From assembly GCA_000708835.1 (NCBI GenBank), contig DF237127.1, forward strand, positions 1-64,000: a stretch of 64,000 nucleotides of DNA, given 5' to 3'. This DNA comes from Klebsormidium nitens (Eukaryota; Plantae; Klebsormidiophyceae). Position numbers and translations under genes: made by a program. Under the pieces are notes generated by a model. That model saw nothing but the letters and a program-made list of their open reading frames with translations. It was not told the origin of the DNA and did not search any database. Shown piece by piece: positions 4,769-29,500 of this stretch. The number at the start of each line of letters is the position of its first letter. The first letter of the stretch is position 1.

Positions 4769-5535
4769 GCTAGTAGCGTATTTTCACGACAGCCATGGAT
4801 CGATTCTTGCGGCGCGGGACAGTGGTCTTACAACCGCTGTCACCGCTTCTTTGATATGCACTGTCATAATTTGCACAGGTTAAAGCCGCGGGAGTGGCCA
4901 TCAGTGCGCTTGTGCGAAGTTGGAGATGAGATGCATGATTCAAGTGTGACATTATGAGACGCAAGCGAATGCGTTGCACGCCATCATTGATATGGTCACG
5001 GTGACTGGAGCTGCCGCGCATGAACAGCTGACGAGCGTCCATCCAAGCTCCTCTGGCATGACAACAGAAAGTGTATGCACGCGCTAGCTAGCACCTGCTC
5101 GACGCCGATGCACGGCTGGCATGCATAAATGCCAATTACACGCAAGAATCTCACACGATTGACCTCCGACGCACTGAAACGTGCTAGAACACACATATGC
5201 TCAGGGTTCATACCCAATTGCGAGAGATCAAGGGTCAACATTAGCTAGCTAGCAATACCCAATGCTTTTAGTACCAATTAAGGCCGCGGATCGACGCGAC
5301 CAGCGAAATGCACGAGCGAGCGAGTACTGGTCCCGCCGCCCGATTGGAATATTCTGCCTTCGTATCTCGCTGTATCGATGTCGTAGGCGCAAGCCGCGTC
5401 TCTTCAGATCTCATGACTACAATCGACGTCTTTGAAAATTAACCGCTTTGACTGTCACTGTGAGCACCTGATATTGCCAGACACCTTAAGTTGGTCCGAT
5501 CCATCGCGTGCAGCGAACCCTGTCTAAATTGTATG

Positions 5536-8500: not shown

Positions 8501-11500
8501 CCGCGCTGGACTCGGAATTGCTGCTTACAGGGCCCCCGTCTTTCCGCTCCGCTTTCGCTTTCTTCTGAAGCTCTTGGGCGTATGCACACGCCTCGGCGGC
8601 GACCGTCAGATCCGGCCACGTGGCGCTGCTAGGGCCGTCGATCTGCAGGCACACCTTGGCTCCGCTCTCCAGCGCCTCGCGGGTCTTTTGGAGCGCGCCC
8701 GCGACCGCCGCGCGGATCCGCTTCCACCTGAACCCTGACACGTCAGCAGTGCTGACGTTACCGTGCGGACCGGGCCCCGTAATTCCCCATTTTGGCTCCG
8801 TTTGCCCCGCCTGAAATGCGACGCTCAGGATTGCAAGTCCTCCCAGACGTTCAAACTCTCCGTCCGGATCCACGATCAGCGGCGGCCTGTGTCCGTATAT
8901 CGCTGACGTCATCTTCTCCATGACGTCATCTCCCACCGGCTCCGTTTCCGGTCCGGCGGGCGGGGTTGCCGTCAGCTGACGCACGATTGACGTCGCGGGG
9001 GTCACGTTCCGTAACCAGCTCCGTAATCCGAAACTCGACCCGCGTCCCACCGACGTTGACACTCCCGCTTCCACGCATCCCTTGGCCCAGTCTGCCAAGC
9101 ACGCCTTCTTCTCCGCTGGTGTCAAGGCGCCCAGAAACGTCGCGATGCCGGCCGCAAGGATTGCGTCGCCCGGCAGATTCTCCAACTGCGCGCGCACGGC
9201 TGACAGCTGGCGCTCCCAGATTGGTCGGCGGCCTGCCAGGTGGCGCAGGAGCAGGCTCGAGCGGTCGCCGTGCTGGTACACGTCAGCGAGCCGCGCTTCC
9301 GCCTGCGTCTGCTTACCCATAACCTGAGGGATAACAAAACATGGAATGTAAATAGCAAAGTAGGATTACGCTGCCCTTGTTTACTATCTGAAAGCATTCT
9401 AGAATCCAAAAGCCTCGGCAGAAGCTCTTATGCAGAACGTCTTGGAGGCCGCCCTTGCTTCAGCCGGCTTCTTCTTGACCCCTCCGCGTTTGGGGGGTTA
9501 CTTGTTTCCCTGTCTTTCTCGCAAATGCCTTGAATCGCCGTCGCCGCGAAGAGAACAAGAGATACCCCCGCAAAGGCCCAGCGGGTGTCGTGTCACCTCT
9601 TTGGCCCCTTGTAACCTTTGCACGAATTCCAAGCCTCTTCCAAAAATTGAATAGTTTGCGTGTAGATCCGTGAAGCACATGACACGAAACATATTGCATC
9701 GAGCACGCTTTTCCCGCGAAAGCACGCTTGAGCCGGCCCACCTTCGAGTCCTTCGCCTGCCATCACTCCCGTCTGCCCCTCGAGCACTTCCCTCAGACTT
9801 GTACGGCTTAGAGGCTTGATGAGAAACCAAATTCCATCTGTATCATAGAGAGCTAAGATAAACCCTGCCGCGCACCTCGACATACGAGCGCTTCAGCCGC
9901 CCCATCGTCACTCGTCCGCCTGCAGCCGCTGCCGCCGTCTCCTGAGCACTTGATTCGAAACTTGCACTACTAAATACAGGTGAATTCTGAGAAGCAGACC
10001 CCAAAAAACGGAGATATATTCCCAATAAATGAAATATATTCTGGCGCCCACCTCGACATATGCGCGCTTGAGCCGCCCCATCTCCGACTCGTCCGCCTGC
10101 AGCCGCTGCCGCCGTTCCTGCAGCCGGATCGCCTCCTCGTCCACTTTTCGCTGCACCGCGCCCAGCCGGCGGCCCTTCTCCTTGACGCTCGCGCGCGCGC
10201 GCGCGTACTCGACGACCGCGAGCACCCACATGCACAGCGAGCAGCACGCCTTACTGACCTGCTCCACCGCGGCGGGGGTGAAGCTGGGGTGGTGAACGTA
10301 CCTAGGAAAAGATGGGTGCATAGTTAAGCAGGGTTTTGATCTGAGATCTTCTTTTAGGAGTGATGAGTGACAGGTTCAGGACATTGGAAAGACTCGCAAA
10401 TAAAGCGATCAGCACGCCTTAAGTTGCTGCTCGACAGCGGCATGGGTGAAGCTTTGATGGTACACGTACTTGGGAGAGGAGGGGGACAGTTCTTCAAGAT
10501 TTTTTTTGACTTCGTGGGTTCTAGGGTTTAGGGAAGTGGAAGAGAAGTTATCTACGGATTTCATAACTCTGTGCATGTGCCTTAAGGTTTAGAGAGGGTG
10601 GGTTTCAGCTGACCGCAAAGCATGGAAATTAATGCAGAGAGCCGCACGTTTCTGAAACATTTCTTCCTCCGCGGCGGGGTCAAAGCTCGGCTGGTTTGGG
10701 GAAAAGAATCAGAGTTTCAGAGGCTCAGTTTTGAGGATTCTCAAGAATGTGAAGTTCCAAAAGGTGCCTTGGAGTGTTTGACAACCCATTCCATTGACGG
10801 TCTCCTACGAGAGCACCTTAAGAAGGGATTACGCATCTTACCGAGACTTTATCTTCACCGCCTTTCCCAATTAGGTAACCATACGAGGCGAACTGAATCC
10901 AAAGTATCAGACACATCCGTTCACAAACCACCGCAATGGTGAACCTCAGCAATAAACAGTTTTGCAAAAGAAAAAAGAGGTTTATGCTCAGTACTGAGCT
11001 CAGTAATGAGTTACCGACCCTACTTAATACTCACTTTTGCAGTGCTTTGAGCGTCTTGTCCGGAATCCGGTCCTTGTCGAGGCCGGCGATCCGGCTGCGC
11101 GCCTCGTTGTCCGCGAGCATCCGGCGCGCGCTTTCCCAGTCCGGGGGGGTGCCCATCAGTAAGCAAACCGCCTCCATCACAGTCTTAACGAGGGGGGGGG
11201 GAGTCGAAAAGGATTTTAACTCGACCATGTCGTCACGCGCGAGGTGCGTGATTTCCAGCAATGCGTCTTCGTACACTTCCGCCGTCCGGCGGAGTTCTGT
11301 TTGGGAGGCGGACGTCAGGGCCTCGATCTCGCGCAACTGTAAGAAAGAGGGAAAGCAGTCACATTAAAAGTAGGAGGCAAGGAAGGACAGTGTCGCAAGA
11401 GAACAGAGTTATATGCTCTACGTTTTGGAGTGAGAATGACGCGAGCACAATCTGGTTACCACATGAGACGGATGGAGAATATGGTTACACGAGAACGAAG

Positions 11501-14500
11501 CAGACATAAAGGCCTGATTGGACAAGAGTGTAAATATCTCAACCGCGCCCAGTTGCGAAGAATGAAGCACCCCACTAATCAGACAATCGTGAAATTATGC
11601 GCACAACCGAAGCACAGTACGAAGACCCAAGACCTACAAAGCAAAGCAAAGAGCACAGATTTCAAAGGCCGCCATGTGGAAACGCAATCCTAATCAACGA
11701 AGGTCGAGCCCCAATTCCTCAGGCTAGAAGGCGGTCTCCCAAACCCTTTGTTCGCAATCCTTGGGGTCACCACTTTGGAAACCTCAGCCAACAGAGTCCG
11801 AAATAGAGTGTACAGCTCTGTGCGCTATATCTGCCATCCGTGCGAATTAGACTCTTGGTACGAAATCTTGCACCGGACGATCAAATACATCGGTGGATCC
11901 AGCGGTCTAGCTTCACGTACCAAGCGCCGACGCTCAAAGAGGGGTTGCCAATTTAGACGCAAACAGCACTGTGAACGACCCAAGGAAAAGAAACATTCAA
12001 AGCCCACCTTGAGTTGCAGTTCCCGGTCGTCTCGTGCCAGTTCCGCCCTCTCTAGATCGACGGCCTTCTGCTTGGCCGCAATTTCTGCCAGCAGCGCCGT
12101 ACTGCAAATGAATGAAGGGGTCAGAGGCTGGTTTATCCAAAACTTCAGGACTAGCTGTGGATTTGAGTATCAAACTTTCGGATCCGGTTGCTTTGAACAA
12201 GCCGAGTTTACTGTCCCCTTTTGATTGATATGATCACACCGAATGGAGCGTGGGTCAGATCCAAAGCATGCTACGTGTGATGGCAGCTGTTTGTCACAAA
12301 ACCTGCGAAAGGGTATCTGAGGGAAGTCGAAATGCGCAAATCCGCAGATAGGGCTAACACAACGATCATACTCAGCTCCTTCGCAGACCTTTCGCATAGG
12401 TTTCAGGGCACTTGAGCCTGATAGTTCGCTACCGCTTAATCTGTAAGGCTCCCAATCAAGTATGACAGAATGATACAGCCCAAAGCGAGGCCCCGTACCT
12501 CTGCTCGAGCAACGCCTCCAGGGCGGGCTGCAGCCCATCCGCGTCGTCATTGCTTCTCACAAGGCCCCTCTGTATCGCCTGCAACCGGTCCAAGCACGCC
12601 TCCAAAACCCTGCGCCGCCGCCGCAAAACCCCCTTCGCGCCGCGCCAGAGGCCGCCCGCGAGCCGCACGAACGCGCCCAGCTGGCGACCGGCGAGCGAGA
12701 CCTCCAAACCCCGCGCCGCCCAGAGCGCGCGCGCGCACTCATACACCGCGGCCGCGGCTGCGGCCGCCGAACTGGGCGCCCACGAGCCGAAACCCTCGAG
12801 CGCCTTCGGGGGGTCTGGCGCGTCGGGGGGGGCCGCGGGGCGGTCTTTCCACAGGTCGTTGATCTTGTTTTGGCGCAAGAGGTACCCCCCCTTTTCGTCG
12901 GAAAAGGTCCAGTCGGCTCTTTGACGAAACGCCTGCTCCGGTTGCGTGTCCCAAACCCTACCTAAACCCTGGTCCGCGAACTCCATAACCGCGAGGTCCG
13001 CGGGCGGGTCAAACCTCCAAACCCTCAGCGTCTTCTGCAGCTCCGGGAAGCCGTCTCTCAGCGCCCGCCACGTGGCGTCCGTGCAGATGAAAATCACGCG
13101 TGGACACGTGGCGGGCTTTGACTGGGCGTCCGCCGGTGGCTGATCTCGGCTGCCGATCTTGTTGCCGGAGCTCTGCTGGTTCTTGGCCCGGCCTTTCGCG
13201 CCGGACGCTGCCTTCCGTTCCGTTCCGTCTTGGGGAATCCGCCCGCTGACGACTACGTCGGCGAGCCACGCCAGCACGTCGACATTTTTCAAGATGGCGC
13301 TCCCCAGCAACAAGCTGGCGCTTCCAAAACCCTTACCGGAGTTCCCGGCCATTGCTGCAGTCAAAGCTTCCCGCAATTCCCGGATGACGTCCGCTGACGT
13401 CATATCCGGAGACGCTGCCGTTAGGTCTTCCGCTCCGGAGCCGAGGAACTTCAGAGCGGCGTTCACCATCCGCCGTTTGCCGCAGCAGGGGGGTCCGATC
13501 ACCGCCAAAGCGTCCCCCCTTACGAGAGCGTCGACCAGCTTCGCGAATTGAATCTCCGCTTCTGGGAAGCTCTCAAGGGGGTTCGCTGACGTTTCCGACG
13601 TGTCTGGCTGACGTATTGGCAAGACTGGCTGTCGCAAAGGCGCCTTTCCTCGCTGCGCCTTCGGACTGTCCTCAAACTGCACGTGCTTTGTCCCCTTTGC
13701 TGCCACGTGGCTCGCGCTAGCAGCTTCCACGTGTTCCTCGTTCTCTTTACCCTCTTCCAAAGTCGCCCACAGCTTCGCACGCCAAATCTGGCGATCCGCC
13801 AACGTGCCGCTTCCGCCCTTCCTCCCCGGAACGGACCGTTCGCCTTGCCGCAAGGGGTTTGCAGGTTTCAGCGCGAGCGGCATCAAGGGCGCGCGCGCGA
13901 GCGCGATCTTTTTCCCCGCCTTTTCGACTGCGGCCGCGAGCGCCCCGTCGAGCAAAGCCCTAAACCCTTCGTCCACGCGCGCGCCGACGCTCTCCATCAC
14001 CGCGCCCCGCAGCGCCTCCGGCCACGAAACCCCCAATCCCCAAATCCCGGCGCCGGCCTTGGTTCGTTCCGGTTCCGCGCGTTCCGGCTCCTTTCCGTCG
14101 TCGGAACCGCGGCCCTTCTGGGCCTTCTTTAGTAGACCCACGAAGTTTGGGACGTCCAAATCGGACGAAGACTCCCGCTTCCGCCCAGCGTCGCCCGCTT
14201 TGTGCTCGTTCCGTTCGACGACAGTTCCGCCGGCCGGAATCCCGTCCGTTTGGTGCGACCCGTGAAGCCGACGTAGTGCTCGCAGCGCGCCCACAAACGC
14301 ATCCAAACCCAGAATTCTACTGGCTGACGTCACGTGGGCTCGTTCCGCCGGACTCCGGGCGGAACCGAAGCGGACTCTGCAAAGCTCCCGGGCAGCGACC
14401 AGAGCGTCTGCCGCCGCTGACGTCATCTCCTGTGCGGACGGCAGTGGTGCTTCTCCAATGGAGAGGTTATCCAGACACGTCTCCAGGATGGCTTGGCACA

Positions 14501-17500
14501 CCGACTGCGGAGGCGCGTCGTTGAAGGTCAGTGTGAATAATCTCCCGTTCAACCGGTTGGGAAGTTTGGCTTCGTCGGACTCTCCACTTAGGGCCAACTG
14601 CAGCCCGGCGATTTCCACCGAGGACCGCTCCGCAGCGCTATACATCGTGCCGCTTCCCAAGACCTGCCTGAGAAGTTCTAGACTTCCCGGAGCCCCGCTC
14701 GCTGACTTGGGACCCTCTAGAGAGAGGTGGACGTCGTCAATCATGACCAGGAGCCTCTTTCCGAGGGGGGTCCGAAGAGCCGTCCTCTTTCCCCCGGGAA
14801 CGAGGTGCGCTCTTAGGACGTCCGAAAGGCTAGCTGCAGACGTGCCACGTGTCATGAAGGCAGTCGCCGAAGTAAACTTCTCCTTAGAAACCAGGCTGCT
14901 GGCTGCCACTTGCATTATGAAACTTTTCCTGCTGGAGGGGGGTCCGATCAGTAGCGGTGGGAGCCCCCCCACGATAGTCATCTCAAGCACTGCTCGGGCG
15001 CGTTCGCTTTCCAGCGTCGGAACGTAAAGCAAGGGGGAAGAGTGCCCGGTTGTCTCCAAACCGAGCAGGGTTACTGGGCTAAAGTCGCCTGGGTTAGATG
15101 ACCCCAACCACGGCACAAAGGCCCGTTTCACACCGCACACCCGGTATTCAAAGAGGGAGCCACTTTCGGGGGGTGGGAATGCGCCCTTCGGCGCCAGCGC
15201 GCCCAAAGGCGCGCGCACACGCGATTCAAGCTCGGTCCTAAAACTGTCGGAAGCGCTTCCTCCGATCGCCCACAAGACGCAGAAAGCGAAGTACAGCGTC
15301 GCCATTCGCTCCGCGGAGTAAATAACCTCCGCCACCTCTCCCGCGCTGCCCGGGCGGGCATTCGGCTGCTTGGGGGATCTCCCCGGTTGCTTGTCAATGG
15401 AGAACGAGCGGCTGAGAATGTGTCCGGTGTCCGCTCCCCCGGTCGGTTTTTCTGTCGCGCTTTCCTCCGCACACTGCGAAAGCTTCCTAGCTGCCACCAC
15501 GTGGGGATCCTTCCGCATTAACTGCTCGAACAGCGCGATAAAGTGGGTCGTATTCCTACTGTACTCCAACCGAGGACCGGATTCCAAATCACTGCCCAAC
15601 GTCCAGAGAGGCTCCGCAGCGCCCACCAGAGCCGCCAGATGCTCCTTCAGAAACGACACCTCGGTCGGCAGATTCGCCACCCACTTTGACACCACTTTCG
15701 CCGCGGCCGTCTCTTCCCGGTCCAAATGGACGATCTTCGCGTCGCTTACCGCGGCCGGTGTCAATCCCGAAACCCCCGAGGTTTCAAAGATCAGCGCCGC
15801 GCCAGCAGGAACCCTGAACGTCTCCCCGGTTGGCAAGCAGAGGGATCCCCTCGCGGCTACCAGGGGCTCGAGAAGAGCCCAGTGAGGGCCCGGGAGGTCG
15901 CCGTCGAGAACAGCCCAGTTCTGGGAAAATGTGGTTCCGTTTCCGCTGCTTGAACGGACGGAAAACTCGGAGCAGAGGGTGGGGAGAAGGCCGTTCTCCC
16001 ACTGCAAAACAAAACGGGTAACATTCGGGTAAGCCAGGATTCTGAAGAGAAAGCAGGGTTATCTTGGCTTTTCAGAGGGAACAGTCGAAAGACTGAAGAA
16101 GAGAGACAACCGGCTGTCAGAGGTGGGGACATTGTCTGTTTTAAAGTTCGTACGTTGCATTGCGTCGGCACGCAGTGCGGCAAATTAAGCCTGGTACAGC
16201 AAGTCCGCTTATTGATGATCCTAGCCACGATTCCGTTTGAAAGAAGTACGCAGAGTTGATACCGCGAAAGTCTCTTCTCTTCCGATAGATAACAGGATGA
16301 AAGCGACTTGAATTCTGAGCGTAGCAAATGTAGACGACCTTTTCCAGAAGACGTGTAGATTTTCTCGTTGCTTCGAAATGAAACCGTTAGCTTTTCAAGC
16401 CCTCCGTAACCGGTGGGCAACTTGACAAAGAGAACGATTTTTTTACTGCCAAGCGGCAACTGGTTGACCAGAACTTAAAACAACAGATTTCGCTCTTCTC
16501 TCAAGTCATCAGCCTCTTGAGATGCAGCGCAAAACACACGTACAAACTGGATGGATAAGTAGAGGAACAAATGAGATGGCTCCAAACCTGGTGAGTCTGC
16601 CCATACTCCCCCAGCAGCTCGTCCTGAGTCAACGCCCCGGGGTACATAACCCGCACGTTAACCCACTCTTCTTCGCCCCGGATATTTGCTCTTTCTCCCT
16701 CCCGGTTACCTGTAACCCGGTTTAGAACCTCTAGCGCCGCAGCCAGTGTCCGCCAACAGCTAGTCTTCCCGCTCAGAACGTCCCCCGTTACGAAAACTGA
16801 CGTCGAATGGGAGAGGGCGTCACACAAGGCGAGGCACTTCGACGCGAAGCTTTCCGCATCGAACGGCAGCGAGGACTGCGCTAACAGTTGCCGCAAAATC
16901 TCCTCCAAGCGCTGTCGATCTTGCGCCGCGATGCGGCTATTGGTATCGGAGGGTTTGTGCAAGGGTTTGGGCGGGGATTTGGACGCGTCAGATTCGACCA
17001 CGCGGCAGGTCCAATCGACGAGCGTCCGTAAGTGCGGCAGGCGGTCTAGGATGACGCCACGTGGCAGCGAGATGGGGAGGGCAAAGCCGGGCTGCACTGA
17101 GATGTCGGCGCCCTCGACGGACACCAGTTGGGCGCCACGTGTCATGCCCTGGAGAGTGACGGGAAAAGTTGTGAACCATTTCGGAGCAGGCCAACAGAAT
17201 GGTGCGAACAAACCTAGTGATGCGCAGTCCTTTGCAAAAGCAGACATTTCTGGCGTAGGGCTGTACAGCTTCGCTTGAGTAGAGCCGTCAGACAGAAGCC
17301 AAAACAGCGGTCAGTCGGGGCGTCAAACCTGTTTACCGGTCAGCCGAGATCATTAATCTGCTTCCGTCGGATAAGTATACGTAGTCAGAAACCCAGAACA
17401 TGTATTCGCGACAATCGCGACAACGCATTCGTTTAAAGTGACAATCCGCTTGAACGATGCTGCACTTTCTGTGACGACGATCAGAAGGGCGATGTAAATG

Positions 17501-20500
17501 CTTGACAACTTTCAGGCGCAATTTGCAGTCCAATGTTGAGATACAATCTTTGAAGCTCATCCTTGGGAACCAATGCAGGACAGCTTCAATCCGGAAATCC
17601 TGCTGGTTTCTGAGAGACTCGTCCCCATTGACCGGTTGATTCCTCATCCTCTACAAGACACTCAGTCAGAGCTGGCGGGAGGGCTGGTGAAAACTGCGCG
17701 AGGACTCAAAAGAAAATTGAAGTTGAGCTTTTGAACGGAAAGCTCATTCTGCTCAGGAGAGCCGCCCGGCGAGCGTTCCTAAGTGTCTGACGGTCATTCC
17801 CTATCAAACGGGCAGTTTGGAATCCTGCGGGACAGAGTTCAGATGCCTACCGTCTGAAGCGCACGGAGTTGCTGCGTCAGCACTGACGTCACTGCAGGCG
17901 AGAGGGCGTCCAGGTTCGAAAGCGACAGCCACGCTCCGCTTTCCGCCGCTCCGGTCAGAAGCCGCGCAGTAGACCTGCAGGAAAACGGAACGAATGTCAG
18001 AGCGTGTTAATAAGTCCCAGTGCAGGGAGCGCATGCATGAAAGATCATCATAGATCAAGGCTTGAATAATGAATGGATTGATTTTCACAGCTCGAAATGA
18101 AGGAAAACATAACAGCCAGGCCAAAGGCTTGCAGGGGCAGACGTGGGTTGAATGAGCAGAACGTGAAGATTGAGATGTCATTCCGGAAGGGCGACGAGAA
18201 AGAATGGACCCTATAACAAACGAAATGCAGTACAAGCAGGGAGAAGGATTCAAAGGATTCACTGCACTCAACTTTCTAGAATGCAGAAAACCAACAAAAA
18301 TCAAATAACCAAGAAACCCAAAGACCCCAGGACTCACCGGTAGTCCAGGGCCGCTGTGCAGACGCTCGGGAGATACAACCGGCCACAGGCCCGGGCAAGC
18401 TCTGCGAGAGTATTCACACCGCCTGCTTCGGGCTCCGGTTGTGCGACGAACTGGCCGGTACTAAGAGCCGAAAAGAGAGACAGAGTGGCTCGGGAGGAGG
18501 TTATGAGCGGCAGGGGGGATTGGGAATCGTCGCCCAGGTATTCGAACCCATACGGTATGGAGAAGTCGCCCATACGGACTGTACAACTATCGCTTTCCTG
18601 CAGGGAAAGGAGGAGTTATAGAGGTTGCAAATGCACGGTCAAGATGGTTTCGGTGATGTAGAATTCCTTTTCGCTTCAGTATCTGCTACATATGCACGAT
18701 CCAGATGGTTTCGGTGATGTAGAATTCCTTTTCACTTCAGTATCTGCTACGATACTCCATACGTAACGAGAACTTCGCAAACCCAACAACTTTGGAGGCA
18801 GTACAGCCCACGATGCTGCCTTCTTGAAGTCCAACCATTTTAGCACCGAGCCTTTACCTTTAGTTGCGTTTCTTGCTCTACGAAGCATCGAAAATCATAA
18901 TGAGCATAAGATTGAGTAAGCAATGCTTTTGTCCCCAATCCGTTCTACTTGTCAAAATCGGGGTGATCAAAAGGTCGATTGTCGTTGCAGACTAAAGTAT
19001 CGAATTAAGGCATTTCTGTTGGATACCTGAGACCCCTGCTCTTTTGATGGCATCGTCAACAAAGGTACCCAACGTTACCGCCTCGCCGCCCAGATCGTAA
19101 GGCTCACCTCCTGCCACGTGTACCGCAGCTCTTTCTTCCACTCCAAGAAACCATCGTCAGCCGCCACCAATCTCCTGAGCACCTGTTTTCGAGCTTCGAC
19201 GGCGGCCAGTCTCCAGTGATCCAGACTCTTCTGGTCGCCGCTTTCTGCCTCCAACTCAGTTCTGCTTCTGAGCTCTCCTGACAGATTGTCTAGTTTGTTG
19301 GACACTAATCCGAGTCTCTCGGAACCTCTTTTTGACTTTCCGGCCGCAGTTTCGGGGGCGTCACTGCTGCTGACGTCCGCGAGAGCGTTGTCAACGTCAG
19401 CGGTCCATTGAATGGCGTCAGCGAGGAGGACGCTCTGCACCGCTGGCGTGCTCGCCTTCCCGTCGAGGACCTGGCAGGGTGGCAACATGTGACGTTACTT
19501 CGCGAACTTCCACTTGGAAATCAGCGGTAATGTGCTTTGTGATTGGTATATTGCAATGGTTTTCAGGTACGACCCTTTGCAGCGGAATCTTGCAAGCAGA
19601 GCGACGGATCTCTTTACCACGTTTCTCGTAGATCGAGCGACTCTTTTCTTTGTGATTGGCAATTCACAACGGGCATGCGACGGAACAAGGCAAGAGCGTG
19701 AAAAGATCAAAAAACGTGGTCGCTGATTTCTTCCGCTGAATTCGTAAGTATTCGGATATTCGCCTATCTGTATCAGTATCAGTACTCAAGCTACGCTTGT
19801 TCAAAAGTTGGAGACGCGAGTTCTGGTACGCTGATCCCTCACCTCTTTCGTCTGAGCGGCAAGCGTCTTTCTGATCATCTCCAGCAACCGCCCCATCCAC
19901 CGGTCAACTCTGGCAGGAACTCTCACTGACCCAAGCAGTCGGTTCAGCGTAAGAACCTCTCCCTTGTGACCTTCAACCGCCGCTACGAAGCTCCGCTCGG
20001 AAGCTTCCGCTTCCGTTCCGGAACTCGCGTTCCCCCCCCGGGTTTGAACGACCACAGACGAGACCCCCGTGAAGCACTTGCTGATTAAGTGGCTGACAGT
20101 GGAGAAGTCGCGCGCTGCCGCCAGAGTCAAAAGTTCCGGGTCGCTGCAAAAAAGGAAGTAAACTTCAGAAGAGACGACTATGTCTGGGTTGATCGCCCCC
20201 CTTTGAACAATCAGGAAGAGATCTCTTGTGAAGTGCTGATCAAGTGGCTGACGCCTGAGAAGTCGAGCGCTGCTGCCAAAGTCAAAAAATTCGGATCGCT
20301 GCAGATTTAGAAGAAGGAAGTTAGATTGAGGAGGCGAGCCTTTTTTGGTTCATCTTTGGGCTTTGAACGACTAGGAACAGAAGTACTGTGAAGCAGCTGA
20401 TCTTAAGCAGAAAAATTGCGCGCCGCCGCCAGGATTAGTAGCTCTGGATTGCCACAAAGGAAAGAAACATAGATCCAAATATGCAAAGGTGACAGGATCT

Positions 20501-23500
20501 ATTCCCCGGATCTGAGCGACTGGATATGGACTTGAGCGAATATGGACAGAAACCCTGTAAAGTATTTGTTTATCACGTGGCTAACGGGCGCAGAATCGTG
20601 GGCTGCCGCAGAGTCAGAAAGGCGTTTTGGGTTCCCTCAAAACAAAAACATTTGAAGGGGCGGATCTGTTTGGATCGAGTCTTCCGGGTTTTAAAATCCA
20701 GGGACGGAATTCCGTGAAGCACTTGCTTATCAAGTCGCGGACGCCGAATTACTCGTGCGCAGCCGCCAGCGTCAAAAGCTCTGGAATGTTGCGGAGTCAA
20801 CAGGAACAGTTGAGTACACACGTTCGTTCGAGTTTGCACGACCAGGGTTGAAACCACAGTCAAACACGTGCTGGAGAAGAACTGACGAGCCAGTGCCAGG
20901 ATGAAAAGCTCCAAACACTGCAAAAACTCAAGGGAGACCTTGGTACATGGTGTCCAAAAGTTGCATCAGTATACTTGGATCACAAGAATGCAGGGAAAGC
21001 AAGTGGTCGGTTGTTCCAGTTCTTGAAGTGCATGTAAGGGAAAGGAATTACATGATGAATAAGGATCCAACTGGGTGCGAAATTCATTCATTGTGGAAAG
21101 TGGAGGTCGGTTCTAAGAAGAACATTTGTGGCAGGTTGACGGTTGGTATCACTATGTAGGAGGCTAACTGTGTAACATCAGTAGTTCACACCTTTGCTTG
21201 GAGAAGATGATGGGAGTTTGGTGGAGTCAGCATTCATTTAATAGGATGAACGGAGCAAAGTTCAAGAGTATATGGGAACGAGGTGGAAGTTGATACAAAT
21301 CTGGTGGCAAAATTCGATGCGAGACCAATGAATTGGAAGAAGTTCGATGTGGTGGGCAGTGGTTTTATGTAGGGTTGTCATGTGATTTGGTGTGGGTGTG
21401 GCGGAGATCTGGATAAAAGATGGCTGAAGTTTGCGGTAAATTGATATTGATGTGGTATGTGAGGAATTTGGGTCAGGGATGGGTTGGATTGTGATGGCAG
21501 ATGACTGGTTGTGTTGGTGTAGGATGGCCTCTTTCGAGGCTCAGAAAAATTGGGAAAATCCGCGTAGTGTGATTATGGCCGTGATACGTCTAGTAAAAGG
21601 CGAGGCGTATATATACTGAGACCGTAATCACGCGGAGAATGTGGGACCGTACGTCGGGCAGCAGTTTATATACCCCCGTCCGAGCGAAAACTTTGATTTT
21701 TTGGTGGGTCGAGCGAAACAAGCTACCGGCACCGTCCACTGCCCATCGTACGGTGGAGATTGATGATCGCGGACTCGGTCCGTGACCGTCCGACTCGCGA
21801 CGCCGGTCGGATTCACGCTGAGTCGGACCGAGTACTCGTGCAAACTTAGCGGTGCTCAAACTTGAAACCCCACGCCGGTACCCAAATTTGAAAATCTGGG
21901 GGGTCAACTTTCGACCGTCGATAAGGCGTCTGGGCTGGGTTTCGAGCTCCGTCAGCCTTCGATTTGATGCGCGACGTTCGGTTTTAAAATCCACAGTAGC
22001 ACCGCAGACTATTTGGACTGGCGGCCACCTTCATTGTTGTAGCAATTCTCTGCAGAGTGCTCGACTTTCAAATTCACTTGGTATAACAGAATAAAGAAGC
22101 CCATAAGAGACCAAAGTCTGCCCTTGGCGCGCAGATGTGAGCGCAGTTTCGCTTGTGAGTCACAGTGCGCTAATAAGGTGTGTCAAGAAGTGGATAATGG
22201 ATACCGCATCCAGTTGGGTGCAGAAAAGTCTCGACGCCACGAATATCAGCTAATGGGATGCAGAAGCACAAAGATGTGTAGATCCCAGAGTCACCGGCAT
22301 GATGTTCTGGGACCACCTTTTATCCCGCTTGCGGGTTTTATTATAGCATCAGAATCTCGTCCGCACAGTGCCAGAAACAATGCTCAACCCAGACAATGAA
22401 CACACGATTTGCTTTGCGAAGCCCTCGCAGACTCACTCCAGCCTGGGTGAGATTGTTGCCCTCCCAAAATGAACCAGCACCAGATTCAAAGATATCAAAC
22501 CAGGGTCAAAAGCCAAGTTTTGTTGGTTCCGAGATCAGAAAACATTTGGACGCCCACCTCAAGAACTAGAGGCGCGGGGAGCCCATCAGCAGCTGCCATG
22601 CATATCATCCGCAAGGAGGCCTGGATCACTTCAAAGCCAGACCGCAAGCCCAAAATCTTTCCTCCTTAGCCTTGAAAAGATTGATAATCGGACGCTCACA
22701 TCTGCCGCAGCGTGACTAGATGGTTGGCAAAGGAGCCTTGGATAAGAGCCCAAAATCACTTCAGATACAAATGTCAACGTAAAGAACCAGGATCGTAGGT
22801 TTTTGCTTTTTCTAAAGAAAATGCGGACGCCCTCCTCAGACATTAGAGGCGCGGGAAGCCCGTCCGCAGCGTGTCCAAGTGGTCCGCAAACGAGCCTGAA
22901 TAAGGGCCCAGAACCCTCCAGATACAAACGTCAAACTAAAGAAGCACGACCACAGGTGTTTGATTTTCTAAAGAGATTCTGGACGCCCACCTCAAGAAGT
23001 ACATTCGCGGGAAGCCCGTCCACAGCGTGTCCAAGCGGTCCGCAAACGAGCCCTGGATCTCTCCAGGCAGGAGATGAATTCAGAAAGGAATGATCTTCTA
23101 CTGCTGCTTTGCAACAGAATTGCAGACGCTCACCTAAGAAAATAGAGTCGCGGGAAGCTCGTCCGCAGCGTGTCCAAATGGTCCGCAAAGGAGCCTTGGA
23201 ATCTCTTCAAACCAAAGGTGAACTCAAAGAGCGACAAACATTAATTTCTACTTTGCTGCGGACGCTTACCTGAGAAAGTACAGTCGCGGGAAGCCCGTCC
23301 GCAGCGTGTCCAAATGGTCCGCAAAGGAGCCCTGGATCTCGGCCAGCCGGTCGCGCAGCGCCGCGCACTTGGCGAGGGGTGACGTCGGCTGCGCGGCCGC
23401 GAGCAGGTGCGCCTTGAGCTGGACTGACGTCATCATGGCGCCCCACTGGCTGGACAGGCTCTGCAGAGGGGGACACGTGGGTCAAGTCGCAGAGATGGGA

Positions 23501-26500
23501 GACTCGTCATGTAGGCGTCGCTGGAGTTGGTGGCTACTTTTACAGTCTGTGGATCCGAGTGCAAGGCTACGAATTGCTTATCGAAGCAAGGGTACGTTGT
23601 TCTCGGAGCCTCACGGGCCTTCAGCTCTTTGGACGGATATACTATCGGTGCAGAATCTACACGGTTATCGGTGACCATGACGATGATGACGTCATCGTGA
23701 CGTCATCATCCCACCTGTTGGCAGGATACACTAAGCCTTGAGAGAGGAGTAGATCGAGCCTAAAGGGCTGCTTGTGGATCAGCGCAACATTCAAACGACC
23801 AAGAACTTGTTGAAAGATAGTTTTCGCAGACCACACCTATTCAGAGGGAGGCAGAATAGGATATGTACTAACAGGAAGGCGCGTTGCTTTAGATAGCAGA
23901 AACTGATCTGGAAGGGAATGGACCTTCAGACGCCCAGCTCTCTAAGGCCTCACAGGTACAAGCATTGTGGCCTTGAGTCGATGAGCTCCTGCCACACCGC
24001 GTTGCTTTCGGGTTGTATTCCTCCAACCATGGGCAGACAAAAACAGCAGTTGGTAGCGCTCCGCGAAATGAAAGCTCGACGAAATAAACCTTGCTCATCA
24101 GGGCTCCAACTGAAAGAATGAATCGCAAGCTCAGAGTCCGAAGCGCCACCACTCGAGTAGCTGGGACTTGAACGGTTAGCGTTCGGACGCTGCCGTCCGC
24201 AAAAATGCAAAGCAGGTACCGTACATTGAGCGAATACCCAAATCGACGACTCAGAAAGTTGTTAATGGTCCGCGAGTATGCGCCACGTCAAACCGAGTGA
24301 GATCTTTAAGCGCAATCTCAAACGTTGAAAGATCTCAAACAGCTGGAACCCAGTCGGCATCAGTTTTCGAAGGCTTGGAAGGAACCGAAAAGGCGGTTAA
24401 GTGCCGCAGGATGTCCTGAAACCATTCATGGAGCCTACCTCAAATAGCTGGTATTCGGACGGCATCAGCTTTCGGACGTCGCTGTCCGCGAAGACGCGTC
24501 CGAGGAAGTCCAGCAGTTCTTGACAGTCCGCCGCATCCTCCACGCGCGACTGGAGCGCCGCAAGAAAGTCCTCCCACTCCTCCATCTCGCCAGCCATGCC
24601 GCCGCAGAACGGATTGCGCGTCAACTGCGCAAGCTCGGCCTGCAAATTGCGCGAAATTCGCTCAAAAAAAAGGAAATGCCTGAAGGGATGGAAAAGCGGG
24701 AACTCCCTCAAGGACCGGCCCACTTGAGATGCTCGGCTACCGCCCCCTTTTTCACATCCAATCGAACCTTTCGCTAGTCCATCTTCATCCTCCCAAACCA
24801 GTTAACAAAATCTAGCACAAGGAAGTGAAGTGTGATGAGTAGTACGATAATGATGAAGAGATCCCACCTGACTCTTGGCAATGCGCCGTATCAAAATGGG
24901 CAAGCCCCCCCAGAACGGGCCACTCAAAGCACTGCGCCAATTCTCCCGTTCCACTTAGCACTAGGCATACTAAAACTTTACCCATCTTGAGAACCAGTCA
25001 AAAAGGTCCAATCTTGACGATAGGAAACTCCTTCAAATTGCTCGGAAACACGCCTACCTGACTCTCAGCAAACCGCCGCATCAAAGCGGGCAGGCCCCCC
25101 AGAACTGGCCACTTGATGTGCTCCGCTAAACCCGCCGCCTTCACCTCCAAGTACACGTTCTGCCAGTCCATCTTCATCTTTTGAAGCCGGTCGAACAGCA
25201 CGGACTCCTCCCTAGCCACCGCGAAGGCCGCGTCCGCGGCCGCGTCGAGCGTCCGAAGGGGAAGGCCGAGCAGGGCGGTTACGGACACCTGGCAAAACGC
25301 GGACGGTTCGGTGAGCTTATACTGAAGGCTTATAGGAGATCGGACAATGTCGCCTCACAGTGAGTCTCCTGGGCAAGCTCAATTTTGCGTCCGCGCATCG
25401 AGCGTCCGAAAGGGAAGGCCGAGCAGGGCGGTCACGGACACCTGTCTAAACGCGGACGGTGCAATCAGCTACAAATAGAACCCAACGTCGACAAATAGAG
25501 TAGAGTCAACGCACGATGTAATAGAACTTGCACCAGCAACCTCGGCAGGTGTCCGAAGGAACCCTCGCAATCCGGCTACTCAGTCTGCAACTTCGGACAA
25601 GTTGGTCGGGTTCGGGCGTCTGACGCAGAGCACAGCCTAAAGAACGCGCTAGCAAGTGAGTGCAACTCGCGCATCACCTCTCCGGCCAGCCCGAGCGCTC
25701 TCTGGAACTGCGCGAGGTGGCGCGGGCGGAGGCAGCCGTCGCAGAGGCGCGTGAGGACGGGCAGGATAGCCTGCCACGTGGCGACCCGGGATTGGAGCTG
25801 AAGCGCAAACCTGCGGCAGAAAATCCAATCCACCTGAGGACTCTTTTCATTGAGAAGAGTAAATCGAAGAGCAACCCGTGCAGTAAGGCTGCGGATGAGA
25901 TCACAGCGCAAGGGTAATAAGATCTTTGGCACGTCTTCTCATTCAAAGGAGAGGAAACCATGTGGGCGAACTTCTACATTGAACACCAATCAAATCGCCT
26001 TCCTCGGGTTCAACGAGTGAAATTCGCGGAAAAATCTTTGTTCAACGTTCGCGCGTAATGTTGACCCTGCCAACAACGAACATCTGCCTTGGAGAATTTG
26101 TAACGAAACCACAGAACGGGTACATTGGTGAGGGGCACACTACAGGGAAAACTTAGGTCAACAGAGCAAGGGAATTCAGTTCACCGGAACAAGGCAAAGG
26201 ACAGAGTCACTTAGTCAAATTCGCACAAAGCCGATGAAGAGAACAGATACAACAATAGAACAGAATGATCTGACAGAAGGACCTGAAAGTGAGAGAAGGG
26301 CCTCACTTTTGCTCCGCCGGGGTGTTGGTCCCACTCTTCGCTTGATCCCCGTCCTGTTTTAGAACCAGTACCGCTCGGAGCTCATCCTGCGTCCTTTCCA
26401 CCGCCGCGCGCACCTCCCCCCCGGAGAGAAAGTCACCAATCCTCAACAACGGTGCTACGTCAGCTTTCGCGACGAAAGCGGACCATTCACACAACGCATC

Positions 26501-29500
26501 CCACAGGCGCACTTTCCTCTGCAGGACCTCCTCGCACGCGGCGAGAAAGTGCTGTATGCGCCGGTCGGGGTCGTAGCCCAGCAGCGCGTACTGCTTCTCA
26601 CAGTTGTTTGCGGACGCGCGGAGGGCGTCCAGGCGGCGCGACTTCTGCGCGAGCGCGTCGCGCGCGCGGGGGGGGGACGCGTCGGGATCGACGAATGCGC
26701 CGACGCGCAGAGAGAGGAGCTCCTGCAATTGAGATTGGGTGCTTTCAAAACCCCTGGGTTTTTGAGTTCGGGCGAGCAGCCGTTTACAGGAGTTAAGGGG
26801 CTGGTCAGGGTGGATCTAACAGGCTGCCTCTTGCAAATATTTTGTTCCAATTGAACTTATATGTGTAACTGTGAAATGCACAGTGATTGATGACCGGCCT
26901 GTCTGCTACACTCTTTGCAACTCCGGAAAGTTTGCGAATCAGGCACAATCCGTTTTCGCTGGTTCTGAGTAAGGATTGTTGAGACTAACGCGACAAAGTG
27001 CTAATCGATCGTTTACGAATCGTTCTGCTAAGAAAGCGTCCGTCGATCCTCCATCTACTCTACTGATCTTGGTACCTTTCAGAGAAGGAGATCCGCACAC
27101 AGACGACTCCCACAAATCTCATCACCTTTCAAAAAGGGCAACGCAAACGCAAACAGCAAAGGCGCTCCACTCTAAACGTACTGCAACATTTCACGCGCCA
27201 GTCGACGTCGGTAAACATAATACACTTTGCCTGACTGAATTCACGACTATCCATGTACGAGACTCAACTAAAGCATGCTTTTCTGCGACACGACCCTTCA
27301 GCGGAATCTAGCCCCCTTCAAAGAGCACAATCACACCTGCCGAATCTGTTCACACAGCTGCGTGGCGCTCCGGTCGAGCGCCCCGTGTACCGCCTCCGCT
27401 TGCTTCTTGATGTGCGCGCGCGTCACCTCTCCCACCGTCACGTATTCCTCCTGCGTGTCTTTCAGGGCGCGCCACGCGGCCGCGACCTGCGCGCTTTTGG
27501 ACGCGGCCGGGTCCGGGATCTGAAGGAAGGGTTGAAGAAGGGTTAGAAGGGGTTTAGATTTGCTCTCGAAGGTATTCTCGAGGTCTTAAAAAGAGGGCTT
27601 TCAGCAGAGTGCTCAAAGATAACCTAGATTCTGATCTCGAAGATGCATTGTACAAAAGTTCCACTTTCAAGGGTCTCTTGTAGGTCATTGCTAGCGGCAA
27701 CGATTCATGATGTCGGCGCGGCATTGAATCGGTTTTCCGGAGACCGGATTGAGGATGGTGACGTCCTGGTTTTACATCAAAGAAGATTGATTCAATGAGT
27801 CTTCTCTGCGCTAACAGATCCTCCGTGGCCCCGATCGCGTCCACGTCAGCCTTGAGCCGTTGCGCGGCGTCCCCTTTTCGCAATAAGCGGCGGAACGGTC
27901 TCCAAATCAAAGCACCAAAATAAACTGCACTTTTGAACAGGCTAGAAAGTCAAGAGCAGGAAGGATTGGATTAAACACGGTTACCTGCGCGAGCAGATCT
28001 TTCCTGGCTCCGATAGCGTCCACGTCAGCCTTGAGCCGTTGTACGCGTCACCATCGCGCCACAATCGAAGCCAAGAACACTACAGCAACGCTTAAACATT
28101 CTACAAAGAAAAGAGCATTGAAGGAATCGAGTAAAGACTGTTCCCTGCGCCAATAGATCCGTCATGGCCCCAAATGCGTCCACGTCAGCCTTGAGCCGTT
28201 GCGCGGTGTCGCCTTTCAAGAATCGGCTCTCCAATCAACTTGCAACCAATAGTGAAACTCTGAGAAAGCCTAAACATAAGATAAGAGAGCAGGAATGGGC
28301 GGGACATGAGAAAACCTAATCATGAAGATAAAAGAGCATAAATGAAGGGGACAAAACATTCACAAATCTTGCCTGGGCTAGCAGATCTTTCATGGCCCCG
28401 ATCGCGTCCACGTCAGCCTTGAGCTGTTGCGCGGCGTCCCCCTTCGCGAGGTGTGGTTGGACCGCCTCCACAAACTTTAGGAACGCCTCTAGTTCCACGG
28501 GCATGCTGCGCAGCTGGGCGATCGCAGCCTCCATGGTCGACTTGCAAGCCTGCAGACCGTACACTGGCAGCTTTTAAATGTATTAATAGGAGGTTATTTG
28601 AAGATACATAAGTCCCGGGCACCTCAATTAAAATCCCTAACCCAAACATTACGCGCTGCGCACCCGCACCCACCCTAACCCCCAAACTAACCCCACCCGT
28701 CCCCCGGGTGCTCACCTTAAAACAATCGGGTATTAGAATCGCCAGTTACCGGAGTCAGACCAGTCGGTACATCCGTTCCTGGCTTCATGACACAACCGTC
28801 CTTCTGCCCCGACACCGCCTACTAAAGCCTAATTGGGGTGGTGTCAGGACAGAAGTTCGTAAAGGCGGGGACGACCCCAATTTGATTGCCCAGGGGCCTC
28901 TGTGGTAAATCTGGGGTCCTCATATGCGGTTCGCAGGGAGCAATAAATGCGATCCCCATCGTACGGTCCGGAAGATGAAACTTGGGGCTGCCCCATCAAT
29001 CGACAGTTCTGAAACGCTTTGTTTGCTGGGCCCATACGTATGCACGATGAGTGTAATAACCCGTTCAATCTCGACGAGCACTCCGTCTCCTCGAAATAAG
29101 GTCACTTTGCAAGTATCTTATTGGTACTTGTTTAGATAGTACTCACAATTAAGATAGTACTCACAATCAGCATTCAATTTAGCGTTAGAAGTATGCTCTC
29201 TCACCTCGATCTTCTTCTTGAGCTCGTCTCCCATAAGCACAGCCAGCCCATGCAGAGTCGCCCCCGCTAGAGGCAGCAGCTTGGCCTTCACTCTCTGCGT
29301 GTCCACCTGCGCGAGCGGGAACCAGCCGAAATCAGCGAAACGGAAAGTGGGTCAGCAAGCGAGACCAAAAGGGATCAATGAAACCACAAACTGGGTACCG
29401 CCAGCCCATGCAGAGTCGTCCTCGCAAAATCCAGCAGCTTGGCCTTCACATTCTGCGTGTCCACCTGCGAGCGGAAACAACGGAATCAGCGGAATCCTCG

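What the first reader, a model, noticed from the sequence alone, without database searches (positions are those of the whole stretch)
17851..18597. Dynein heavy chain with a dead primary ATPase site (AAA1 Walker A and B both lost)
Upstream and downstream context aligns with AAA1 (YGFEYLG; LAELARACG...CTAALDYR; LTGAAESGAW). However, the canonical GPAGTGKT P-loop reads QPEPEAGGV (no Lys) and the Walker B CFDEFNR reads LSLSNLDA (no Asp-Glu). AAA1 hydrolysis is established as essential for dynein motility. The ~13.7 kb frame is nevertheless intact, with conserved linker and MTBD motifs. Inference: a non-motile pseudo-motor acting as a structural or regulatory axonemal tether, possibly comparable to DNHD1-type atypical heavy chains.
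Basis: partly seen in the sequence, partly recalled or inferred. Interest (0 to 1): 0.72.

Follow-up and report, generated by a model that had tools for sequence, protein, structure and literature searches.

The report
Catalytically dead orphan dynein heavy chain
This is an intact, spliced, selectively maintained dynein heavy chain gene whose main ATP site is completely destroyed while its microtubule-binding stalk is its best-conserved part. It most likely binds microtubules without acting as a motor; it is a further, independent example of the known "non-motile dynein" kind.

Summary
Window 18597..17851 (minus strand) holds two GT-AG exons of dynein AAA1. The P-loop GPAGTGKT reads EPEA-GGVN, with no Lys or Thr and one residue shorter. 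Walker B CFDEFN reads SLSNLD.

I add that the sensor-I Asn is gone (TMNPGY reads ISLPRG) and roughly 80 residues of the AAA1 lid are missing. Pfam's AAA1 model gives 0, 20 and 13 bits on the three exons, against 464-533 bits on normal dyneins. No alternative exon with a canonical site exists in the window.

Four orthologous loci (55-78% identical) carry the same dead motifs. dN/dS is 0.05-0.11 on the dead-site exons, 0.01-0.20 (mostly under 0.1) on the stalk and microtubule-binding exons, and 0.2-0.4 on the rest of the ring. This is not a pseudogene.

Among 1.84 billion representative proteins only its own cluster scores below E 1e-30. In trees it is a long-branch orphan. Its tail, microtubule-binding domain and AAA6 lean weakly to DNAH6-type inner-arm dyneins.

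It resembles DNHD1 and DNAHX in function, but I found no sign that it belongs to either family.

The scan reported a similar dead-AAA1 dynein on other DNA of this genome. Expression could not be tested.

The parts
3315..36431 (-). Minimum span of the dynein heavy chain gene: at least 28 exons. The 5' and 3' ends were not determined.
   Evidence: Pfam hits on exons, tblastn of canonical dyneins, conserved exon blocks in orthologous loci L001-L005
35665..36431 (-). N-terminal tail exons (36431..36297 and 35931..35665). They score best against DNAH6-type (IAD5) inner-arm references.
   Evidence: 30 and 28 bits against 16 for the next class; reference P0020 labelled by its PDB matches
26306..32414 (-). 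Tail exons conserved in L005 at 67-89% amino-acid identity: 32414-32205, 31952-31764, 30650-30477, 30238-30104, 29309-29199, 28555-28373, 27549-27334, 26725-26306.
19096..25821 (-). Linker exons (Pfam DHC_N2): 25821-25660, 25297-25055, 24651-24436, 23463-23269, 20199-19840, 19473-19096.
18338..18597 (-). Exon AAA1a. It runs from YGFEYLG (18552..18532) to ALDY and holds the dead P-loop EPEAGGVN at 18435..18412.
   Evidence: dN/dS 0.09
17851..17974 (-). Exon AAA1b. It holds ...ESGAW followed by the dead Walker B SLSNLD at 17925..17908.
   Evidence: dN/dS 0.05-0.11
16588..17148 (-). Exon c. It holds the rest of the AAA1 large domain with lost sensor-I (ISLPRG, 17073..17056), the truncated AAA1 lid, and the start of AAA2 with an intact P-loop GDVLSGKT (16785..16762).
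12488..16001 (-). 1171-codon exon covering AAA2 (C-terminal part), AAA3, AAA4 and the start of the stalk. AAA3 P-loop GPPSSRKS (14945..14922) and Walker B DD (14744..14727). AAA4 P-loop-like GPPCCGKR (13496..13473). Residues after about 520 match no dynein profile.
10040..12106 (-). Stalk CC1 (12106-12002), CC1 to microtubule-binding domain (11342-11034), microtubule-binding domain to CC2 (10303-10040). Canonical, without a flap insertion, and the most constrained part of the gene.
5539..9338 (-). CC2/AAA5 exon (9338-8196) and AAA5/AAA6 exon (7611-5539). The latter holds Pfam Dynein_heavy at residues 555-653.
3315..4767 (-). Three further blocks conserved with L001 (4767-4552, 4018-3845, 3479-3315). 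They are presumably C-terminal exons but have no detectable dynein similarity.

Best explanation
This is a lineage-restricted 'orphan' dynein heavy chain, probably derived from a single-headed inner-arm dynein. Earlier notes of this scan take the genome for a Klebsormidium-type streptophyte alga; I did not check that.

Shown from sequence: the gene keeps the dynein scaffold (tail, linker, AAA ring, antiparallel stalk, microtubule-binding domain) but has lost its engine.
- AAA1 has no P-loop Lys/Thr, no Walker B Asp-Glu and no sensor-I Asn, and its lid is truncated.
- AAA2 keeps a canonical P-loop in all five species.
- AAA3 keeps Lys-Ser and the axonemal-type DD, but has Arg in place of the P-loop Gly.
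- The AAA4 motifs drift between species.

Inferred: AAA1 can neither hydrolyse ATP nor, very probably, bind it. AAA2 probably still holds a structural nucleotide. The protein therefore cannot run the ATP-driven linker swing or the cycle that switches stalk register.

Shown: selection acts most strongly on the stalk and microtubule-binding domain, on the two exons that carry the remodelled AAA1 core, and on one linker exon.

Inferred mechanism: the tail anchors the protein at an inner-arm-type site, and the head binds the neighbouring microtubule without nucleotide control. It would then act as a passive cross-bridge, brake or spacer, or as an inert partner or placeholder among active dyneins. 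It would not generate force.
For: Dead AAA1 and truncated lid: (Pfam AAA_6 gives 0, 20.2 and 12.7 bits on the three exons, against 464 and 533 bits on canonical controls).

No alternative canonical exon.

Canonical splice sites and collinearity.

Same dead motifs in four orthologous loci.

Purifying selection:
- dN/dS 0.05-0.11 on AAA1a and AAA1b.
- 0.01-0.08 on the CC1 and CC1-to-microtubule-binding-domain exons, and 0.04-0.20 on the microtubule-binding-domain-to-CC2 exon.
- 0.20-0.40 on the rest of the ring.

Open 1100-1250-codon frames in five species, against 16-45 expected stops under neutral drift.

Canonical, flap-less microtubule-binding domain and gap-free stalk.

AAA2 P-loop conserved. 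AAA3 and AAA4 motif states.

Inner-arm leaning (all margins small):
- Best PDB match of the microtubule-binding-domain and AAA6 exons is the Chlamydomonas chain 8glv_Fm, which ranks next to DNAH6.
- The tail exon scores best against DNAH6-type references.

Precedent for non-motile heavy chains with degenerate AAA1: DNAHX and DNHD1 (bioRxiv 10.1101/2025.01.18.633724).

That AAA1 hydrolysis is needed for dynein motility is established knowledge of the family.
Against:
- dN/dS of 0.26-0.40 over most of the ring is high for a dynein. Much of the ring may be only a loosely constrained scaffold.
- Axonemal location and inner-arm docking are inferred from weak, short similarities (30 against 16 bits on one tail exon). 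Both trees leave the class unresolved.
- AAA4, AAA5 and the C-terminal region are not recognised by any Pfam model, so an intact closed ring is assumed, not shown.
- The structure prediction of the large exon failed (mean pLDDT 29).
- The gene's 5' and 3' ends are undefined, and I built no joined spliced model.
Confidence: 0.65

Rival explanations
1. The protein is a microtubule-binding pseudo-dynein that does not work as an axonemal tether. It might serve in assembly or transport of other dyneins, as proposed for the inhibited dynein-X particle. Or it might be a cytoplasmic microtubule-associated scaffold in a lineage that lacks cytoplasmic dynein 1.
For: DNAHX is proposed to act in transport or assembly of dyneins and not in beating. 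Viridiplantae lack cytoplasmic dynein 1 (PMC5100056). The tail is only weakly inner-arm-like. The N-terminus has a proline-rich extension not seen in the references.
Against: Kollmar found that tails of orphan dyneins keep the class, and thus presumably the docking site, of an axonemal parent. The only significant tail similarity here is to DNAH6-type inner-arm chains. The microtubule-binding domain is intact here, whereas in DNAHX it is disrupted by insertions.
Confidence: 0.2
2. It is still a working motor. ATP turnover at another site (AAA3 or AAA4), or an unrecognised alternative exon or edited transcript, supplies the power stroke.
For: AAA2 has a perfect P-loop. AAA3 keeps Lys-Ser and the DD found in normal axonemal dyneins.
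Against: In all studied dyneins AAA1 is the site whose hydrolysis drives motility (established knowledge). AAA2 lacks catalytic residues in dyneins generally. AAA3 has Arg for the P-loop Gly in all five species. The AAA4 Lys and Walker B Asp are not conserved. No alternative exon exists. The AAA1 lid that closes the pocket is truncated.
Confidence: 0.05
3. It is a decaying relic (a 'ghost gene') on its way to loss, with no function.
For: The ring is extremely divergent: a stem of 2.5 substitutions per site and most Pfam dynein models undetectable. dN/dS of 0.3-0.4 on the large exons is relaxed.
Against: All mapped exons are open. The 1171-codon exon is open in five species at dS up to about 1.1, whereas 0 of 500 neutral simulations stayed open. 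dN/dS is 0.01-0.11 on the two stalk exons 12106 and 11342 and on AAA1a and AAA1b. Splice sites are intact.
Confidence: 0.04
4. It is the algal orthologue of animal DNHD1 (Kollmar class 11), or of DNAHX.
For: It shares the phenotype of a degenerate AAA1 and a very divergent motor.
Against: Class 11 is reported as metazoan-specific (PMC5100056).

The exhaustive profile search found nothing between the family itself and generic dyneins at E 3e-18. No named DNHD1 was among the 30 hits whose names I looked up.

DNAHX derives from the outer-arm alpha chain, keeps Walker B and bound ATP, and has a disrupted microtubule-binding domain. All three features differ here.

The gar proteins P0111 and P0116, annotated as outer-arm-like and carrying a degenerate AAA1, sit far from this family in the tree.
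Confidence: 0.03

Closest known systems
DNAHX / dynein-X (sea-urchin sperm; Chai et al. 2025, bioRxiv 10.1101/2025.01.18.633724)
   Same: A dynein heavy chain that keeps the overall architecture but has non-conserved AAA1 motifs and is argued to be non-motile. It is maintained in several species.
   Different: [quoted passage not shown] Here the affinities are inner-arm-like. The P-loop Lys, Walker B and sensor-I are all gone and the lid is truncated. The microtubule-binding domain is the best-conserved part.
DNHD1 (human orphan heavy chain; Kollmar class 11)
   Same: A highly divergent heavy chain with a poorly conserved AAA1 that lacks Walker B catalytic residues. It is functional despite its old 'ghost gene' reputation.
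   Different: It is reported as metazoan-specific. I found no specific sequence link in my searches. The similarity is analogy or convergence, not shown homology beyond the dynein superfamily.
[quoted passage not shown]
   Same: Best-scoring known class for the N-terminal tail exon, the flap-less microtubule-binding domain and the AAA6 exon. The mapped open blocks total about 4270 residues, with the gene ends undefined.
   Different: Canonical members have a fully conserved AAA1 (Pfam AAA_6 above 450 bits). In the AAA2-AAA3 tree this family does not join them and sits on a stem of 2.5 substitutions per site.
Kollmar's unclassified 'orphan' dyneins, which include a Klebsormidium flaccidum orphan and Chlamydomonas DHC12 (PMC5100056)
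   Same: Bona fide heavy chains with very divergent motors and tails that still resemble an axonemal class. This gene may be, or be related to, the Klebsormidium orphan drawn in that paper's Fig. 3.
   Different: That study states that the ATP hydrolysis sites were not analysed in detail. I could not retrieve its sequences to test identity.
Other degenerate-AAA1 heavy chains met among my hits: Gefionella okellyi P0154, Lepisosteus oculatus P0111/P0116, Trichomonas vaginalis P0123
   Same: Walker A and/or Walker B of AAA1 are degenerate: GPEDAGKR/CLASIDR, GPERIGKK/CFDSIDR and GEHCSGKT/CYKHADN.
   Different: Each sits elsewhere in the tree. Gefionella and Trichomonas keep the P-loop Lys, and gar keeps a Lys shifted by one position. 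Here the Lys is lost and the loop is one residue shorter.

Membership tests
Dynein heavy chain superfamily | Linker (DHC_N2) N-terminal to the AAA ring | tested here: met
   Pfam DHC_N2 on exons 20349-19804 (42.7 bits), 24801-24400 (29.8 bits) and 25938-25579 (16.1 bits)
Dynein heavy chain superfamily | AAA modules in dynein order, with the stalk and microtubule-binding domain between AAA4 and AAA5 | tested here: met
   AAA1 remnant, AAA2 P-loop, AAA_lid plus AAA_7 (AAA3), MT stalk and Dynein_heavy (AAA6) lie in collinear order. AAA4 and AAA5 are recognisable only by position and by a P-loop-like motif.
Catalytically competent dynein motor | AAA1 Walker A GxxxxGK[ST] | tested here: not met
   EPEA-GGVN in the window, [QV]EPE[AEQ]GG[VA]N in orthologues
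Catalytically competent dynein motor | AAA1 Walker B Asp-Glu | tested here: not met
   SLSNLD in the window, SL[ST]N[LV][DN] in orthologues
Catalytically competent dynein motor | AAA1 sensor-I Asn and a complete AAA1 lid domain | tested here: not met
   TMNPGY reads ISLPRG. About 80 lid residues are absent in all five species. The Arg aligned to sensor-II is His in the other four species.
Microtubule-binding dynein stalk | Canonical microtubule-binding domain flanked by CC1 and CC2 of normal length | tested here: met
   Gap-free alignment to flap-less references. Best PDB match 64.5 bits, E 8e-17. 88-98% identity among orthologues, dN/dS 0.01-0.20.
DNHD1 (Kollmar class 11) | Phylogenetic grouping with animal DNHD1 | not testable with these tools
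   No DNHD1 sequence could be fetched by reference. Indirectly, the exhaustive profile search shows no relative better than generic dyneins (E 3e-18) outside the family's own cluster. None of the 30 hits whose names I looked up is DNHD1.
DNHD1 (Kollmar class 11) | Taxonomic range: Metazoa only | tested here: not met
   Range from PMC5100056. This gene's only relatives are four unannotated environmental or SRA contigs with the same intron-rich structure. Earlier notes place the genome in Klebsormidium; I did not verify that.
DNAHX | Outer-arm-alpha origin, retained Walker B with bound ATP, insertions disrupting the stalk and microtubule-binding domain | tested here: not met
   Walker B is lost. 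The microtubule-binding domain is intact and without insertions. The reference group that includes the presumed outer-arm chain P0044 (class not checked) scores lowest on most exons. DNAHX features.
IAD5 / DNAH6-type inner-arm dyneins | Tail of the class | tested here: inconclusive
   One tail exon scores 30 and 28 bits against IAD5 references, 16 bits against the next class. A second exon scores 13 bits. Other tail exons are uninformative.
IAD5 / DNAH6-type inner-arm dyneins | Motor domain groups with the class | tested here: inconclusive
   AAA2-AAA3 tree: the family is an unplaced long branch. Tree of the microtubule-binding-domain exon: nearest row is the IAD5 reference P0020, without support. 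Per-exon scores lean to IAD5 by small margins.

The most novel reading that the evidence does not exclude
This is an independent pseudo-dynein family, seen so far only in this alga and four close relatives, in which the destroyed AAA1 core has acquired a new, tightly constrained role. Its dN/dS of 0.05-0.11 matches that of the microtubule-binding domain, while the rest of the ring drifts. One possible role is a nucleotide-free latch that fixes the stalk in one binding register. The protein would then be a permanent, ATP-insensitive microtubule cross-bridge or brake in the zoospore axoneme, or would work outside cilia in a lineage without cytoplasmic dynein.
Probability: 0.25. Interest if true: 0.6.

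Novelty: new member of a known kind. Interest (0 to 1): 0.45.

Why it matters
Non-motile dynein heavy chains have only recently been taken seriously: DNHD1 genetics, and DNAHX by cryo-EM in 2025. This gene adds an independent case from outside animals (a green alga, if the earlier notes are right). It differs from both in two informative ways. The main ATP site is not merely weakened but dismantled, with the lid shortened. The microtubule-binding stalk is the most strongly conserved part. That combination separates 'dynein as microtubule-binding scaffold' from 'dynein as motor'. It also gives a natural construct for asking what a dynein ring and stalk do without an AAA1 cycle. With the second dead-AAA1 dynein already reported in this genome, it suggests such pseudo-motors are a recurrent, selected component of reduced streptophyte flagella. 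It is not a new kind of system.

Tried and rejected
No place was named as human-like.
- Structure: AlphaFold2 on the 1200-residue exon with the five-sequence alignment gave mean pLDDT 29. It was unusable, so I ran no fold search.
- All searches were exon by exon, by reference.
- Subfamily by phylogeny: the AAA2-AAA3 tree (113 rows) and the microtubule-binding-domain exon tree (66 rows) both leave the family unplaced. MAFFT fragment mapping was unreliable for the long divergent exons.
- DNHD1 test: no DNHD1 sequence was retrievable. Atlas look-alikes were only generic dynein fragments.
- Organism: Pfam on ten non-dynein ORFs found nothing. Sample accessions are not in the paper library. Rfam found only a U5 snRNA. 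The Klebsormidium identity comes from earlier notes and is unverified.
- Weak tblastn hit at 18266..18126, inside the AAA1 intron: a Phe/Ser-rich chance match without DE, not an alternative exon (read).
- Pseudogene reading: rejected on dN/dS and open frames.
- Supplementary files of Kollmar 2016 are not held, so I could not check identity with the published Klebsormidium orphan.
Full report
**What is at the coordinates.** The gene lies on the minus strand and is spliced. There is no long open frame in the window.

The finding's limits are exact exon ends:
- Exon AAA1a is 18597..18338.
- Exon AAA1b is 17974..17851.
- The next exon (c) is 17148..16588.
- The large following exon starts at 16001.

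All four have polypyrimidine-AG acceptors and GT donors, and the reading frame is continuous. A split Arg codon joins a to b; Q-T|G-M-T joins b to c; T-H-Q|W-E-N joins c to the large exon.

**State of AAA1.** I aligned the exon peptides one by one to 19 canonical heavy chains.
- Where all references read GPAGTGKTET, this gene reads EPEA-GGVNT. The Lys and Thr are gone, acidic residues have come in, and the loop is one residue shorter.
- CFDEFNR reads SLSNLDA.
- The sensor-I segment FITMNPGYAGRTELPDNLK is reduced to PISLPRG..VILDRLPHL.
- About 80 residues of the AAA1 small (lid) domain have no counterpart.

Pfam's AAA1 model (AAA_6, cut-off 25.2 bits) scores 0, 20.2 and 12.7 bits on exons a, b and c. 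The same stretch of two canonical dyneins scores 464 and 533 bits.

No other P-loop candidate exists on the gene strand apart from those of AAA2, AAA3 and AAA4. Canonical AAA1 queries hit only these exons. A weak intronic hit at 18266..18126 is a low-complexity chance match.

**Gene anatomy.** Pfam, tblastn and conservation against orthologous loci map the following, from 5' to 3' on the minus strand:
- tail exons from at least 36431 down to 26306;
- linker exons, 25821 to 19096;
- AAA1, 18597 to about 16900;
- AAA2, with an intact P-loop GDVLSGKT at 16785..16762;
- a 1171-codon exon (16001..12488) holding AAA3 and AAA4;
- stalk CC1, microtubule-binding domain and CC2, 12106 to 10040;
- the AAA5 and AAA6 exons, 9338 to 5539;
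- three further conserved blocks down to 3315.

The mapped open blocks sum to about 4270 codons. Every search used single exons by reference.

**Relatives and selection.** The word search with the large exon found four proteins, 55-78% identical. All are unnamed and come from two SRA assemblies and two JGI metagenomes. Their contigs carry the same exon order.

All four contigs hold exon b with the dead Walker B. The three that reach far enough upstream also hold exon a with the dead P-loop; the closest relative's contig ends short of it.
- The dead P-loop reads FVAQ[PV]EPE[AEQ]GG[VA]NT.
- The dead Walker B reads GAW[LS]SL[ST]N[LV][DN].
- ISLP[RS]G and the short lid are also shared.
- The AAA2 P-loop stays canonical, GxxxSGK[ST].

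Nei-Gojobori dN/dS by region:

| Region | dN/dS |
|---|---|
| Large exon | 0.29-0.39 |
| AAA1a | 0.09 |
| AAA1b | 0.05-0.11 |
| Stalk CC1 exon | 0.01-0.04 |
| CC1 to microtubule-binding-domain exon | 0.04-0.08 |
| Microtubule-binding-domain to CC2 exon | 0.04-0.20 |
| Linker exon 23463 | about 0.1 |
| Remaining ring exons | 0.20-0.40 |

Substitution-only neutral drift at half the distance to the closest relative puts a mean of 16 stops into the large exon. None of 500 simulated copies stayed open. The gene is therefore maintained. The parts that matter most are the microtubule-binding stalk and, unexpectedly, the remodelled AAA1 core.

**Other nucleotide sites.**
- AAA3 reads GPP[SA]SRKS in all five species. 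Lys-Ser is kept and Arg replaces the P-loop Gly. Its DD Walker B is the same as in the axonemal references.
- AAA4 reads GPPC[CS]G[KM]RR, and the residue aligned to its Walker B is S, N or D. The site is not conserved.
- Canonical AAA4, AAA5 and C-terminal Pfam models find nothing.

**Stalk and microtubule-binding domain.** The three stalk exons align without gaps to flap-less references and keep the usual signature residues. The best PDB match of the microtubule-binding-domain exon is the Chlamydomonas chain 8glv_Fm (64.5 bits). Next come DNAH2 (50 bits) and DNAH6 (47 bits).

**What family.** An exhaustive profile search of 1.84 billion representatives found only the family's own cluster below E 1e-30. 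The next hit is 3e-18, and only 392 hits reach E 1e-3. All of them match profile positions of about 1-520, which is AAA2-AAA3.

The 30 hits whose names I looked up are ordinary or orphan dyneins of protists and animals. None is DNHD1.

In a 113-row tree of the AAA2-AAA3 block the five sequences form a 100% supported clade on a stem of 2.5 substitutions per site. The clade is attached in an unresolved region. The tree of the microtubule-binding-domain exon is also unresolved; there the stem is 0.96 and the nearest row is the DNAH6-type reference P0020.

Per-exon scores lean weakly to that class. The only significant tail similarity is to DNAH6-type references: 30 and 28 bits, against 16 for the next class.

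Kollmar (PMC5100056) reports several relevant points:
- Orphan dyneins keep the tail of their parent axonemal class.
- DNHD1 (class 11) is metazoan-specific.
- The tail tree (Fig. 3), which shows orphan dyneins, includes Klebsormidium flaccidum among its species.
- The ATP sites were not analysed.

My reading is an orphan that probably descends from a single-headed inner-arm dynein, possibly the IAD5 group. It is not a member of DNHD1 or DNAHX.

**How it probably works.** Shown: AAA1 lacks every element needed to bind and hydrolyse ATP. The scaffold and the microtubule-binding domain are kept under selection.

Inferred: without an AAA1 cycle there is no linker swing and no ATP-controlled change of stalk register. 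The head should then bind the neighbouring microtubule in one fixed affinity state while the tail docks like an inner-arm dynein. That would make it a passive cross-bridge, brake or spacer, or an inert partner of active arms.

The closest working analogies are DNAHX and DNHD1. They differ from this gene in three ways:
- DNAHX keeps Walker B and bound ATP.
- DNAHX has a disrupted microtubule-binding domain.
- Both are animal families.

**Limits.** The structure model of the large exon was unusable. The organism was not identified by me. Earlier notes of this scan call it Klebsormidium nitens and report another dead-AAA1 inner-arm-type dynein elsewhere in the same genome. I could not compare the two genes.

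**Verdict.** The gene is a new, independent member of the known kind 'non-motile orphan dynein heavy chains', and its interest is moderate.

Noticed in passing
window 21526-21637 (-): A full-length U5 spliceosomal snRNA gene (57 bits, gathering score 40) lies inside a linker intron of the dynein gene, on the same strand.
   Followed up: no
window 22705-23331, 29242-29616 and 10236-10695: Arrays of decayed copies of exon ends plus adjacent intron, spaced 136-234 bp. There are three to four copies of the donor end of exon 23463-23269, two copies of the acceptor end of exon 29309-29199, and one to two copies of the acceptor end of the microtubule-binding-domain exon 10303-10040. Earlier notes on other dynein genes of this genome describe the same kind of 'exon-boundary echoes'.
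   Followed up: partly
window 18631-18750: A 61-bp tandem duplication (2 copies, 94% identical) lies in the intron just upstream of the AAA1a acceptor. It is not a copy of the exon.
   Followed up: no
proteins P0154/P0005 (Gefionella okellyi), P0111/P0116 (Lepisosteus oculatus), P0123 (Trichomonas vaginalis), P0139, P0009: Several other heavy chains among the profile hits also have degenerate AAA1 Walker A and/or B, for example GPEDAGKR/CLASIDR and GPERIGKK/CFDSIDR. Dead-AAA1 dyneins seem to recur across eukaryotes. The Gefionella one was the best hit outside the family.
   Followed up: partly
window 36273-36752 (-) and 37269-38360 (-): A proline- and serine-rich open stretch lies directly upstream of the conserved inner-arm-type N-terminal motif, and a further 364-codon low-complexity open frame lies beyond it. 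This may be an N-terminal extension or the 5' region. The start of the gene was not determined.
   Followed up: no
window 48000-50000: GC content drops to 0.43, and several overlapping open frames of 140-220 codons lie on both strands. None has a Pfam match. This may be a repeat or a mobile element.
   Followed up: no
window 5536-5538 and the equivalent positions in L001, L002 and L004: The AAA6 exon's open frame ends at the equivalent position in four of the five species, only about 38 residues after the Dynein_heavy domain. Either a donor site lies just before it, or the usual AAA6 lid and C-terminal domain are reduced or carried by the unrecognisable downstream exons.
   Followed up: no
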